From Podarcis liolepis (lineage: Eukaryota): 64,000 bases of DNA. Within the stretch, counting starts at the first letter, position 1; each line of letters starts with the position of its first letter. Of this stretch, positions 5,820 to 51,771 are shown piece after piece. The stretch lies in the NCBI GenBank assembly GCA_965112155.1, contig OZ218106.1. One strand, given 5' to 3'. The notes under the pieces were generated by a model that searched no databases, was not told where the DNA came from, and saw nothing but the letters and a program-made list of their open reading frames with translations. The position numbers and the translations under genes were made by a program.

Positions 5820-6545
5820 GCAGTGACAATCACTAAAAAGGTGGTGCCAGAATGCACAGTGCAGTCCTGAGAACCAGATAAAGGTAGCACTGAGCACAAT
5901 TTCCCCCTGTGAAAAAGGAAAGGAGTCCCTCTATTTCATATGTAGGGTGGGCAAATTTTTGATAACCTCCTTCTCAAGGCAAAGAGCAGCTCTGGAGGAG
6001 TGATTTCCAACAGTGGAGGAAAGCGTGAAACTCCTACTCCAGCAGTCTCCGTAATTGTTGGCTTTCCCCAGCAGCTGTCATCTGCATTTTTAAAATATGG
6101 ATATGGAATACAAATGTGCATTTAACATCACATCTACCTGGGCTCACAGACGACAGGAAAGAGGGCAATTTTTTGCTCTCGGGCAATTACCCTTGCAGGG
6201 GGTTAGACCTGCCAAATTTCCAACAGAAGGTTCCTGTTTTGTAGGCAACTTATAAAGCCATACAGCTAGACTCACAAATAAATGGTGGCTCTATTGGACA
6301 AGTCAGGGTGTTGTCGAATGAAGTAGTTCCATTAGCACAGGGATTGCCATTTGCACAACAGAACTTCCTTTGCTCCTCTCTCTGTGTACCCCTGCACCTT
6401 CCCCACATCTTCTCCAGAGGGTTGGAGAAACCCTCAGAACAGATTTAGAGGGTGCATGGGGACAGGAAAAGTTCCAGCCCGAAGTCCTTGCAGAATGTTG
6501 GATATTTTTGCTAAAATATATTTGAGTTGAAGGTTGTGCAGTTTG

Positions 6546-7683
6546 GGGGGCCACTAGGGGCGCATTGGAAGATGGCCGACAATAACATCTCTCTGACCCA
6601 CACGAGGTAATTAAGAGGCTGTGATGGGAGTAAGCAGCCTCCCGGCCCCCCCAAGCGGGTGGGGGGAACTGCCCTTGCCTGCTGTGCCCTATACCACCCC
6701 CGAATTTGAGGGGGTGGGGGCACTAGGCAGAAAGCCCTTGTGTGGACTTCGGCGCTCCTGGACGCTGTCTCTGATTCGCGCCTCTAGCTGTAGCAACTTC
6801 AAAAGAAACAATTAGGAGGAAGCTAATGCACATATTTCAAGGAAGAATGGGGAGTAAAGACTGCTAATTGAGGAGATCTCTGAGAAAGAAGACGGGTCGG
6901 ATAAACAGCAATTTATCATGAGAAGACACACCAAGGCTCGGTATGTCGGCAACGGGACTGGATGGGGGGGGGACTTTCCTTTCTTTTCTCTATGTGATTA
7001 ACCAAGAATCCCCCCCCCCACACGAGTCAGAAATGCCGCTTAAATGACCTAAGCTGATGATTTAAGCCTGTGTGGAGATAATTTTCTAACCAAAAGCATG
7101 TTTTAAGGAGATCATGGAGAGTATAAGAGCTTTGGGATGACGCAGTAAAAAATAGCGTCGCCATTTTGGCAAGTTCTGTCGAAAGACTTATGTCTGGGAG
7201 GAGGAGTGGATCTGTTTTCATATGTGGGCGAGCCTCCTCAGAGGGACTAAAGAAGGCGACAGATTTGCGAAGATTAATGATGGAAAGTGTGCTTTTATTT
7301 ATGGAAGTGATGATGTATGGAAACCATCTCGATATGGTGATTGGACGAACGGAAAAATCCACACAGGATTATAACTGGTGTTTACTTGCTTAAGGAGATT
7401 ATCAGAAGAGATCATAAAGAAAAAAGAAAAATATATGAATAAGATGAGATGTGGGAACAGCAAGATAAGACTGGATAGAATTATGAATATTATTTGGACA
7501 GATTTGTAGATATTGTGGATATTAACGCAGCAGCAAGATGATGATTGGAATCCCCTTCGGAACTTGAAATATGGGTCCCCCCAACAAAAAATTTAAAATT
7601 CGGCTTTGTAATTCGGAATTTATGTGATGTGATTTGATTTGATTGGTCGGTTAATAAAAATTATTTAAAAAAAAAAAGAAGAA
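6546..7683 (+). mobile_element. L1-mobilised non-autonomous retroposon, 1138 bp, apparently 5'-complete
   Basis: Perfect 17-bp TSD GAAGGTTGTGCAGTTTG (6529-6545, 7684-7700); starts GGGGG; YY1 motif AAGATGGCCG 6569-6578; AATAAA 7653-7658; A11(GAA)2 tail; no long ORF. Confidence 0.88.
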
Positions 7684-8185
7684 GAAGGTTGTGCAGTTTG
7701 TAATTTCACTCCCCCTTTCCCTCCTCCATTCATTGGAACCACCATCTGAACTCTGAATGAGTATGAATGAGGAACAAATGGATATGTGACATTCAGAATG
7801 CTGGGCTCCTCCAGATGCCCTATTTGCTAACCATTCATCTTGATTTGCTTGCACAATGTTTATGGGGAGGTTAGATGATATCCAGTCTTTATTGAATAGC
7901 CTGTCATATTTGTTTGGTGAGGAGCTACACCACAATGAGTGCTCATCCTTATTTTCTTGCGTGTCAAGACCCTGAGCCCTCCCCCATTTTGTTGAATAAT
8001 GAAACACATGGACACTAGTATTTTAGGTTAATGGGCTAAAAAGGCCACAACTTTATTGGTTACAGAATGTGAGTGGCATTGGCTTAGGCACTGGAATTGA
8101 ACCAACTATATCTGATTCCTTCTGTGCCCTGCAGGTAGTCTAGTAAGGGTCAACCACCAGTAGGGGGAGCCCTGTTGATGTACAT

Positions 8186-29194: not shown

Positions 29195-29585
29195 CATTAT
29201 GTTCCTGGTTATACCTGGTCAGATCTGAGGAGGAGGCATTCCTGATCATATTGCAGACTGGCAGGATGCCTTCTTATTGCATCTTGAATGTGGCCTCAGT
29301 AGTGGTACCCACTATCTGGAATAGCCTTCCACGTGCTGTTTGTGAGGCATAAACAGTCTCAGGTTTCAAATGCCTCTTCGTTCAGGCTTTCCCTGGCTCA
29401 TAAGGTTCATCTTTCCTCTCCATTCTCATTTGTTTCCAGGGATATCCCTGGACTATGTATTTGTAAAACCAATAAAAATGATTTCATAAAAAAAACCCAT
29501 CAACATGACCTTATTGTGTTTTATGTAAACCTCTTAGGGATTTTGCATATTGAGTGGTATACAAATATTATTAGTAAATAAATAA
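29195..29585 (+). mobile_element. L2-type LINE 3' fragment
   Basis: ..GTGGTACCCACTATCTGGAATAGCCTTCC.. then TGTAAACCTCTTAGG..TGGTATACAAAT..AAATAAATAA tail. Confidence 0.6.
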
Positions 29586-51059: not shown

Positions 51060-51087
51060 ATCATCATCATCATCATCATCATCATCA
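51060..51087 (+). repeat. (ATC)n microsatellite
   Basis: About 9 ATC units. Confidence 0.9.
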
Positions 51088-51771
51088 CTTCACAGACCAG
51101 GACTCAAGGCATCTAAAACATTTTTTTTAAAAAAAAAACATATAATTTTTTTTAACCTAAAACACACTGATTTCACCCACCAGGACATTTTGTCAAGCAA
51201 CCTGCCCTATGCCTGATGCTATTATATATGACGTCAGGGATGTCATATATGATGACTGAGCTGAAAAGTTGTTTGCAAACAGTGGCGATTTCTGCCCCCA
51301 TTTCTGCTTCAGTCAGAATTCTCTAACATCCCTAGTAATTACACTCCTCCTCTGCCATAATGAGGATACCTGGTTGCACAGTAGCTACATTTTTACTTTC
51401 TCACAGTCTTCCAAAGTGATGCTAGGCTGAGGGTATTTGGGGAAATTAAAAGGGCAGCTAGATGCCTAGAGTGACCAATCAGGGGAAAAAAGAATTCAGG
51501 GAGGCAGGGTAGATACCAGCATGGTCACTGCTAGGATGCTGGGGCCCTGGGAGCTGCCCAAGGATTCCAGGTGCAGATGTAGGACAAGCAGGAATGAGCA
51601 GTGGCATCTGGCTAGCCACAAGAGAGCAAGAAAACACATTGAGCATGGACATCTGCATAGGGAAAGTCTATGCAAGCAGCCTGTCCTTGCTCAGAGCATG
51701 AATGGCAGGGCTGAGGAAACCATGCAATGTAGGAATAGGGCAAGTGGTGCAGTCCACCGTGTATTAAACTA

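What the first reader, a model, noticed from the sequence alone, without database searches (positions are those of the whole stretch)
6529..7700. Candidate new family: a complete 1.14-kb non-coding L1-dependent retroposon (mini-L1 / HAL1-like)
Seen: a 1138-bp insert between perfect 17-bp direct repeats. It begins GGGGG with AAGATGGCCG at about +24 and a CpG/G-rich first ~250 bp, then an A/G-rich body. It ends AATAAA-AATTATTT-A11-(GAA)2. The longest sense ORF is only 75 aa, with no RT or endonuclease motifs and no recognisable tRNA/5S/7SL head. Known: long TSDs with poly(A) are the signature of L1 target-primed reverse transcription, and mammalian L1 5' UTRs begin GGGGG..AAGATGGCCG, where YY1 positions an internal Pol II promoter. 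Inference: this is not an ordinary 5'-truncated L1 but a unit with both L1-like ends and the coding region deleted or decayed, i.e. a Pol II-driven non-autonomous parasite of lizard L1. A frameshifted MF-KEIMESIRAL stretch near 7098-7140 may be an ORF1 coiled-coil remnant (weak). The perfect TSD and retained CpGs suggest a recent, possibly polymorphic insertion.
Basis: partly seen in the sequence, partly recalled or inferred. Interest (0 to 1): 0.85.

Follow-up and report, generated by a model that had tools for sequence, protein, structure and literature searches.

The report
Non-coding L1-type retroposon family copy
This 1.14-kb insert is one copy of a gene-less jumping element present in hundreds to thousands of copies in this lizard and its relatives; it most likely spreads by borrowing the copying machinery of L1 elements, which is a known way of life, so it is a good catalogue entry but not a surprise.

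Summary
A 1138-bp insert (6546-7683) lies between perfect 17-bp direct repeats. It starts with a G-run and AAGATGGCCG at +24, and ends AATAAA, 8 nt, A11, GAAGAA. It has no protein-family, Rfam or tRNA match.

Reads from two DNA runs show a high-copy family, not a one-off retrocopy:
- 1,200-2,500 contigs lie on the insert.
- Depth is roughly 40-6,500 times that of the unique flanks.
- Many contigs end at exactly 6545/6546 and continue into unrelated, A-rich flanks.
- Subfamily indels are present.

RNA reads cover the whole element with about a 10:1 strand bias, probably sense.

Not supported:
- The ORF1 relic.
- "Recent, possibly polymorphic": the copy differs about 2-3% from the family majority, and a run labelled as another organism carries it at the same site.

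Not testable here: homology of its ends to this lizard's own L1s, and absence from Dfam/Repbase.

Two other first readers noted what look like ~1.12-kb copies of the same element elsewhere in this genome (unchecked).

It is a new member of a known kind, of moderate interest.

The parts
6529..6545 (+). Left target-site duplication, GAAGGTTGTGCAGTTTG
   Evidence: 17/17 identical to 7684-7700. Chance expectation is about 7e-5. The preceding bases are TT, so the inferred bottom-strand nick is CCTTC/AACTC, which is loosely TTTT/AA-like.
6546..7683 (+). The whole retroposon copy, 1138 bp: non-coding, with a purine-rich sense strand
   Evidence: Read depth rises 100- to 1000-fold exactly inside these bounds (table 2).
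6546..6550 (+). 5' G-run: 5 G, or 6 if the last G of the TSD is counted
   Evidence: Other copies begin with 5-7 G followed by CCAC[C/T]AGG (loose-end consensi at 6557/6559, table 7). 22 (X1), 13 (X8) and 4 (X15) contigs break at 6545 into unrelated flanks (agreement 0.41-0.61).
6551..6564 (+). CTCF-like motif, defective in this copy (one G short)
   Evidence: There is no match within 3 mismatches to CCASYAGRKGGCRSY as the sequence stands. With the extra G that 4-11% of the family depth carries behind 6556, the match is 14/15 (table 4).
6569..6578 (+). YY1-type box AAGATGGCCG at +24
   Evidence: The core AAGATGGC is the YY1 site of mammalian L1 5' ends (consensus G2-6(A/C)G2AGNCAAGATGGCGGA, PMC5381506). 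Its function here is inferred.
6572..6610 (+). 12-codon mini-ORF (MADNNISLTHTR*) starting at the ATG of the YY1 box, in a good Kozak context
   Evidence: Translation is not shown.
6546..6800 (+). G+C- and CpG-rich head, the candidate internal promoter. It is the most abundant part of the family.
   Evidence: GC 57-66% with 11 CpG. Depth is 850-6,500 times unique in X1 and 190-1,600 times in X8. The RNA fold has z = -3.56.
6894..7271 (+). Central body, the least abundant or most divergent part of the family
   Evidence: Depth is 67-294 times unique in X1 and 37-127 times in X8. It has no protein-family match.
7653..7658 (+). Polyadenylation signal AATAAA
   Evidence: It is the only AATAAA/ATTAAA in the insert and lies 8 nt before the A-run.
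7667..7683 (+). A11 tail followed by GAAGAA
   Evidence: The 3' 127 nt have no stable stem-loop (z = +2.1).
7684..7700 (+). Right target-site duplication

Best explanation
6546-7683 is a full-length copy of a multi-copy, ORF-less, non-autonomous retroposon family of this lizard lineage.

Proposed mechanism, all of it inferred:
1. RNA polymerase II starts in the G-run, directed by an internal promoter in the G+C-rich head. The YY1-type box at +24 would work as the YY1 box does in mammalian L1.
2. The transcript is cleaved and polyadenylated at the element's own AATAAA.
3. The poly(A) RNA is captured in trans by the ORF2p (and probably ORF1p) of an autonomous L1.
4. It is inserted by target-primed reverse transcription at a staggered nick, which produces the A-tail and the 17-bp target-site duplication.

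The family most likely arose from an L1 by loss of the coding region. I put this at about 55:45 against a host Pol II transcript that happened to carry a downstream promoter. The head and tail are about 10 times more abundant than the middle, which suggests they are shared with sister elements.

What is shown: the anatomy, the lack of coding capacity, the high copy number, a common 5' terminus, subfamily structure and strand-biased RNA.
What is inferred: the Pol II/YY1 promoter, L1 as the driver, and the L1 ancestry.
For: - Perfect 17-bp TSD, AATAAA and A11 tail.
- Family status: 2,485 contigs (X1) and 1,212 contigs (X8) lie on the stretch, in every identity class (483/783/1020/199 in X1).
- Depth: summed depth is 5.6e3-5.5e5 inside the insert, against about 80-90 for the unique flank contigs in X1. 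In X8 it is 5e2-2.4e4 against 12-17. The median ratios are about 570 and 160.
- Common 5' end: 22, 13 and 4 contigs break at exactly 6545 into non-agreeing, A-rich flanks.
- Colinearity: only three internal joints were seen, each in a single contig, so the copies are mostly colinear.
- Spread: runs under ten organism labels and 14 studies hold 13-44% of the 31-mers.
- No coding capacity or small-RNA head.
- Six T4 runs on the sense strand argue against Pol III.
- No 3' stem-loop, which fits poly(A)-dependent recognition.
- RNA raw reads cover 6516-7649 with first mates 13-72 on the minus strand against 0.07-12 on the plus strand (table 2). This means sense RNA if the library is of the usual dUTP type.
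- All vertebrate L1s end with AATAAA plus poly(A), and mammalian L1s start with a G-run plus a YY1 box (PMC5381506).
- Pol II transcripts can be retrotransposed in trans when ORF1p and ORF2p are supplied (PMC2666806).
Against: - No autonomous L1 of this genome could be compared, so neither L1 ancestry nor L1 partnership is demonstrated.
- Published Anolis L1 5' termini (GACTTCCGGTG..., GGGNGCTGCGCATGC; PMC5381506) do not resemble this head.
- The target site TT/GAAGG is only loosely TTTT/AA-like.
- Table 6 lists no place where RNA reads pile up at their starts, 6546 included.
- 17 RNA reads run across the 5' junction of another copy into its A-rich flank. Some of the RNA signal is therefore read-through rather than element-initiated.
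- Most RNA reads are only 88-95% identical to this copy.
- The strandedness convention of the RNA library is assumed.
- Summed contig depth is only a rough proxy for copy number.
Confidence: 0.78

Rival explanations
1. The family is mobilised by L1 but is not derived from L1. It descends from a host Pol II transcript (a lncRNA or mRNA) whose promoter elements lie downstream of the start site, so that its retrocopies remained transcribable and founded a family.
For: - There is no detectable L1 ORF1 or ORF2 remnant anywhere in the body.
- The head differs from published lizard L1 termini (PMC5381506).
- YY1 boxes just downstream of the start site also occur in host genes (my own knowledge).
- The mini-ORF sits in a Kozak context.
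Against: - The G-run plus AAGATGGC start is the L1 hallmark in mammals (PMC5381506).
- The purine- and A-rich sense strand is L1-like.
- Head and tail are about 10 times more abundant than the middle, as expected if they are shared with sister L1 derivatives.
- Other first readers report RT-less L1 derivatives with YY1-type starts in this genome (unchecked).
Confidence: 0.3
2. It is a one-off event: either a processed pseudogene of a single-copy host transcript, or an individual L1 copy that suffered an internal deletion during or after insertion.
For: - The anatomy of a single copy (TSD, AATAAA, A-tail) would look the same in either case.
- There is no second copy in the 64-kb window.
Against: - Thousands of contigs at 88-100% identity lie on the insert, and depth is 40-6,500 times that of the unique flanks.
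- Many independent flanks begin at the same 5' end.
- Subfamily indels are present at 6643/6659.
- Ten organism labels hold the sequence.
Confidence: 0.03
3. It is the non-autonomous partner of a LINE clade other than L1 (CR1, L2, RTE/Bov-B, Vingi, R4), recognised through its 3' end, or it is a long Pol III SINE.
For: - Lizard genomes carry many active LINE clades with SINE partners (table in PMC3747384).
- LINE deletion derivatives that keep a LINE 5' end exist, for example RTE1-N1_LA (PMC3747384).
- The tail ends in GAAGAA rather than pure A.
Against: - A canonical AATAAA 8 nt before an A11 tail and a 17-bp TSD are L1-type features.
- The 3' 127 nt are less structured than shuffled sequence (z = +2.1).
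- There is no microsatellite tail.
- There is no tRNA, 5S or 7SL head and no A/B boxes, and six T4 terminators lie in the body.
Confidence: 0.07

Closest known systems
HAL1 ('half-L1') of mammals
   Same: A non-autonomous family that has L1-type ends, lacks ORF2 and is mobilised by L1. HAL1 arose repeatedly (PMC5753468).
   Different: HAL1 is defined by encoding ORF1p. This element has no ORF1 and no detectable remnant of one. It is in a lizard, not a mammal.
SVA / LAVA composite retroposons of hominoids
   Same: A non-coding, kilobase-sized, Pol II-transcribed, polyadenylated element with long TSDs that is mobilised in trans by L1 (PMC5753468).
   Different: There is no composite architecture: no hexamer repeat, VNTR, Alu-like or ERV-derived modules. 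The start is L1-like (G-run plus YY1 box), which SVA lacks.
LINE deletion derivatives that keep the LINE ends (RTE1-N1_LA of the elephant; trypanosome RIME/NARTc, the latter from my own knowledge)
   Same: An ORF-less element whose 5' and 3' ends would come from the autonomous partner. This is the architecture proposed here.
   Different: Those elements belong to the RTE or ingi/L1Tc clades. Homology of this element's ends to an autonomous L1 has not been shown.
Processed pseudogenes (L1-made retrocopies of mRNAs)
   Same: The same insertion hallmarks: a full-length Pol II transcript, AATAAA, an A-tail and a 17-bp TSD.
   Different: Those are single events from an intron-containing parent gene. 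This is a family of hundreds to thousands of copies with subfamilies.
Mammalian L1 5' terminus (G2-6(A/C)G2AGNCAAGATGGCGGA, YY1-positioned initiation)
   Same: A G-run at +1 and an AAGATGGC core shortly downstream (PMC5381506).
   Different: The box lies at +24 rather than about +12. The intervening sequence is a CTCF-like motif. The Anolis L1 termini described so far are different sequences.

Membership tests
Poly(A)-type, L1-dependent non-autonomous retroposon | Flanked by a target-site duplication of about 7-20 bp | tested here: met
   Perfect 17-bp TSD. Chance expectation is 7e-5.
Poly(A)-type, L1-dependent non-autonomous retroposon | 3' poly(A) tail, preceded here by a polyadenylation signal | tested here: met
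   AATAAA at 7653 and A11 at 7667-7677.
Poly(A)-type, L1-dependent non-autonomous retroposon | No reverse transcriptase or endonuclease of its own | tested here: met
   No ORF longer than 75 aa on the sense strand (88 aa stop-to-stop). Pfam found nothing at E up to 10 beyond noise.
Poly(A)-type, L1-dependent non-autonomous retroposon | Repeated: many copies with their own flanks | tested here: met
   1,212-2,485 contigs lie on the stretch, depth is 40-6,500 times the unique flank, and 13-22 contigs per DNA run break at 6545 into unrelated flanks.
Poly(A)-type, L1-dependent non-autonomous retroposon | Insertion at an L1 endonuclease-type site (TTTT/AA on the nicked strand) | tested here: inconclusive
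   This copy has CCTTC/AACTC. The upstream-flank consensi of other copies are A-rich but agree poorly (table 7).
Poly(A)-type, L1-dependent non-autonomous retroposon | Mobilised in trans by L1 ORF2p (and ORF1p) | not testable with these tools
   This needs a retrotransposition assay or co-variation with L1 activity.
HAL1 | Encodes ORF1p (Transposase_22) only | tested here: not met
   No ORF1-like piece in any sense frame. The 75-aa ORF has no relative among 1.84 billion representatives.
HAL1 | Ends homologous to a contemporary L1 family | not testable with these tools
   No L1 of this genome is available: none in the window and none in the searchable collections.
SINE (Pol III) | Head derived from tRNA, 7SL, 5S or snRNA with internal A/B boxes, and short length | tested here: not met
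   No tRNA gene, no Rfam hit, no B box, six T4 terminators, and a length of 1138 bp.
SVA-like composite | Modular structure with VNTR or hexamer repeats and SINE- or ERV-derived parts | tested here: not met
   Only trivial tandem repeats of 24 bp or less. No internal repeats.
Autonomous L1 | ORF1 and ORF2 (endonuclease plus reverse transcriptase) | tested here: not met
Processed pseudogene | Single retrocopy of an intron-containing parent gene | tested here: not met
   High copy number with a shared terminus and subfamilies.

The most novel reading that the evidence does not exclude
An ORF-less, Pol II/YY1-driven 'mini-L1' is the main parasite of L1 in this lizard clade. It would be a functional analogue of SVA that has reached 10^2-10^3 or more copies although it encodes nothing. 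That would imply weak cis-preference of lizard L1 proteins. A subset of copies carries an intact CTCF-type motif at the very 5' end and could seed insulator sites. The family may not be described in any repeat library.
Probability: 0.3. Interest if true: 0.55.

Novelty: new member of a known kind. Interest (0 to 1): 0.4.

Why it matters
Non-mammalian L1s are usually pictured as many low-copy, mostly full-length families. Successful non-coding Pol II parasites of L1 (SVA-like) are known mainly from primates.

A kilobase-sized, gene-less element with an L1-style start that outnumbers typical lizard L1 families would give a handle on two questions. How strict is L1 cis-preference outside mammals? 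How do promoters with a YY1-type start travel with a retroposon?

Practically, it is a repeat family that should be in the species' repeat library. This includes its subfamilies and its sister elements of 1.8-2.5 kb that other first readers of this scan noted (unchecked). It also offers insertion markers shared between closely related lizards.

Tried and rejected
- Second copy or L1 relative in the window: BLASTN with word size 9 found only A-rich chance hits. The hits at 29471 and 51123 were read and are unrelated.
- Fetching other copies through predicted proteins: the 111-aa antisense ORF and the 64-aa ORF of the head gave nothing in the search for homologous proteins. The 75-aa ORF gave nothing among 1.84 billion representatives.
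- Fetching copies from public contig collections with exact patterns from the conserved head: 0 hits in metagenome contigs and 0 in viral contigs. These collections hardly contain lizard DNA, so the blanks say nothing.
- ORF1 or ORF2 relic: Pfam at E up to 10 on 15 sense-strand pieces and the antisense ORF gave only noise.
- CTCF site in this copy: rejected, because the motif is one G short.
- 3' stem-loop for a stringent-type LINE partner: none.
- SVA-like VNTR: none.
- Long ORFs elsewhere in the window, to place the gene context: no Pfam domains.
- Literature: four full-text searches found no description of such a lizard family. Bao and Jurka 2010 on HAL1 is not held.
- The search of earlier findings by sequence was blank.

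Full report
**1. The observation**

- GAAGGTTGTGCAGTTTG occurs at 6529-6545 and again at 7684-7700 without a mismatch. About 7e-5 such 17-mers are expected by chance in the 1.6 kb examined.
- The 1138 bp between the repeats (6546-7683) begin GGGGGCCACTAGGGGCGCATTGGAAGATGGCCG.
- They end with the only AATAAA of the insert (7653), then 8 nt, A11 and GAAGAA.
- The first 250 bp are 61% G+C with 11 CpG. The insert as a whole has CpG observed/expected 0.63, against 0.20 for the window.
- The sense strand is purine-rich (31% A, 26% G).

**2. It does not code for anything recognisable**

- The longest sense ORF is 75 aa (88 aa stop-to-stop). The longest antisense ORF is 111 aa.
- I scanned every sense-frame piece of 30 aa or more, plus the antisense ORF, against Pfam at E up to 10. 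Nothing appeared beyond noise, and in particular no L1 ORF1p, endonuclease or reverse-transcriptase family.
- The 111-aa and 64-aa ORFs have no relatives in the 5.8-billion-protein word search. The 75-aa ORF has none among 1.84 billion representatives read by HMMER.
- The proposed 'ORF1 coiled-coil remnant' at 7098-7140 is therefore unsupported.
- There is no tRNA gene, no Rfam family (best E = 0.5) and no B box. Six T4 runs lie on the sense strand from +439 onward. A Pol III SINE is excluded.
- There is no VNTR or internal repeat, so it is not an SVA-like composite.

**3. It is a family, not a one-off**

No other copy lies in the window. The public read data settle the question.

- Runs under ten organism labels and 14 studies hold 13-44% of the insert's 31-mers (about 40% in the 14 best). 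None holds half or more. This is what a repeat about 3% away from its relatives would give.
- I laid two DNA contig sets, one putative RNA contig set and one raw RNA-seq run on 6300-7900. 2,485 contigs (X1) and 1,212 contigs (X8) lie on the stretch, spread over all identity classes from 99% or more to under 90%.
- Summed depth rises from about 80-90 (X1) or 12-17 (X8) on the unique flank contigs to 5.6e3-5.5e5 (X1) or 5e2-2.4e4 (X8). The rise falls exactly between 6546 and about 7650.
- Relative to the flanks, that is a median of about 570-fold (X1) and 160-fold (X8). The tool warns that this is not a copy number, so I take it only as 'hundreds to thousands'.
- 22 (X1), 13 (X8) and 4 (X15) contigs break at exactly 6545 into flanks that do not agree with each other (agreement 0.41-0.61) and are A-rich. 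Many copies therefore begin at the same nucleotide in different places.
- Other loose ends show the canonical start as 5-7 G followed by CCAC[C/T]AGG.
- Only three internal joints were seen, each in a single contig, so the copies are largely colinear.
- High-agreement loose ends at 6643 and 6659 show a subfamily that differs by an indel in the head.
- Two other first readers of this scan described ORF-less retroposons of 1124 and 1129 bp with a YY1-type start on other pieces of the same genome. I could not read those sequences, so they are leads and not evidence.

**4. Uneven abundance along the element**

- The head (6546-6893) is 850-6,500 times unique depth in X1.
- The middle (6894-7271) is 67-294 times.
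- The 3' third is 185-1,577 times.
- Simple 5' truncation would give the opposite gradient.
- Two explanations are possible. Head and tail may be shared with sister elements; first readers report RT-less L1-type elements of 1.8-2.5 kb in this genome (unchecked). Or the middle may simply diverge faster, so that fewer contigs pass the 88% filter. Several 'loose ends' in the RNA reads (6885, 7271) are in fact diverged homologues. I cannot separate the two.

**5. Age of this copy**

- In both DNA runs, more than 80% of the laid depth differs from this copy at 19 or more sites (1.7%). This is a lower bound, because 199 further rows were not shown.
- The 31-mer share implies about 2.6-2.9% divergence.
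- A perfect 34 bp of TSD is not unlikely at that divergence.
- A 1,294-nt contig of X8, labelled as a different organism from X1, runs from the unique flank 47 nt into the element with three differences.
- X1 matches the flanks with 0-2 differences.
- No contig in either run joins 6545 to 7701, which would be the empty site.
- 'Recent, possibly polymorphic' is therefore not supported. The retained CpGs may reflect the subfamily or methylation state rather than youth.

**6. Transcription**

- The raw RNA-seq run covers 6516-7649. First mates lie at 13-72 on the minus strand against 0.07-12 on the plus strand. The immediate flanks have almost no reads (table 2).
- In the usual dUTP libraries this pattern means sense-strand RNA. 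A 10:1 bias is much more than the orientation bias of intronic insertions would give.
- Caveats:
  - Only 66 of 429 reads are 95% or more identical to this copy.
  - Table 6 lists no place where reads pile up at their starts.
  - 17 reads cross the 5' junction of some other copy into an A-rich flank, so part of the signal is read-through.
  - The library convention is assumed.

**7. Mechanism**

- The long TSD, the A-tail and the canonical poly(A) signal make this an L1-type target-primed reverse transcription product. So does the 3' end, which is less structured than shuffled sequence (z = +2.1).
- All vertebrate L1s, including lizard L1s, end in AATAAA plus poly(A) (PMC5381506).
- The inferred nick, CCTTC/AACTC, is only loosely TTTT/AA-like.
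- To propagate, a retrocopy must carry its promoter downstream of +1. The G-run, the AAGATGGC core at +24 and the G+C-rich head are the obvious candidates. They mirror the mammalian L1 terminus G2-6(A/C)G2AGNCAAGATGGCGGA, where YY1 positions initiation (PMC5381506).
- The head's RNA is unusually structured (z = -3.56).
- Pol II transcripts need both ORF1p and ORF2p in trans in cell assays (PMC2666806). I infer the same here.
- The ATG of the box opens a 12-codon ORF in a good context. This might bring the RNA to ribosomes, where ORF2p is made. That idea is speculation.

**8. Origin**

- The L1-like start, the A/G-rich sense strand and the abundant head and tail favour an L1 that lost its coding region.
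- However, the Anolis L1 termini in print (GACTTCCGGTG...; GGGNGCTGCGCATGC; PMC5381506) are different, and no coding relic remains.
- A host transcript with a downstream promoter is a live alternative, at about 45%.
- No L1 of this genome was available. There is none in the window, and the searchable contig collections gave no hits.

**9. Comparison with known families and novelty**

- It works like SVA (non-coding, Pol II, L1-mobilised) but is not composite.
- It looks like HAL1 but fails HAL1's defining feature, which is ORF1p (PMC5753468).
- It has the architecture of LINE deletion derivatives such as RTE1-N1_LA (PMC3747384), but in the L1/poly(A) mode.
- Four literature searches found no description of such a lizard family.
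- Dfam and Repbase could not be queried. For a repeat this abundant in sequenced genomes, an automatic library entry is likely.
- I therefore rate it a new member of a known kind and moderately interesting.

Noticed in passing
window 6551-6564: The head carries GGCCACTAGGGGCGC, a CTCF-type motif that is one G short in this copy. 4-11% of the family depth has an extra G behind 6556, which gives a 14/15 match to CCASYAGRKGGCRSY. Many copies read CCACCAGG. A subset of the family could therefore carry functional CTCF sites at its very 5' end.
   Followed up: partly
window 6546-7683 (sites): There are 19 sites where more than 80% of the family depth differs from this copy. At 6 of them the copy has G where the family has A, and at 5 it has T where the family has C. 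This could be subfamily-diagnostic, mutational drift or pre-insertion RNA editing. It is unexplained.
   Followed up: no
window 6300-6461 and 7812-7900: The flanks contain other moderately repeated sequence: depth is about 10-40 times unique at 6354-6461 and about 60 times at 7812-7865. The RNA reads at 6300-6363 all differ at 6340, 6342 and 6346 and diverge at 6363, so they come from another copy of that repeat. The immediate target site (6462-6545, 7684-7811) is unique.
   Followed up: no
window 6546-6800: The first 255 nt fold far better as RNA than shuffled controls (-119.6 kcal/mol, z = -3.56). Complementary G-runs and C-runs drive this. Its meaning for promoter function or RNP formation is unknown.
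   Followed up: no
another copy of the family (RNA run X23; loose end at window 6557): 17 RNA reads continue upstream of an element start into AAAAAAAAAAGAAGGAT. At least one expressed copy is therefore transcribed through its 5' junction, from an A-rich, typically L1-like target site.
   Followed up: no
window 1-64000: None of the eight ORFs of 130 aa or more in the window has a Pfam domain, so the window seems to be intronic or intergenic. A (CAT)n microsatellite lies at 51061-51088.
   Followed up: partly
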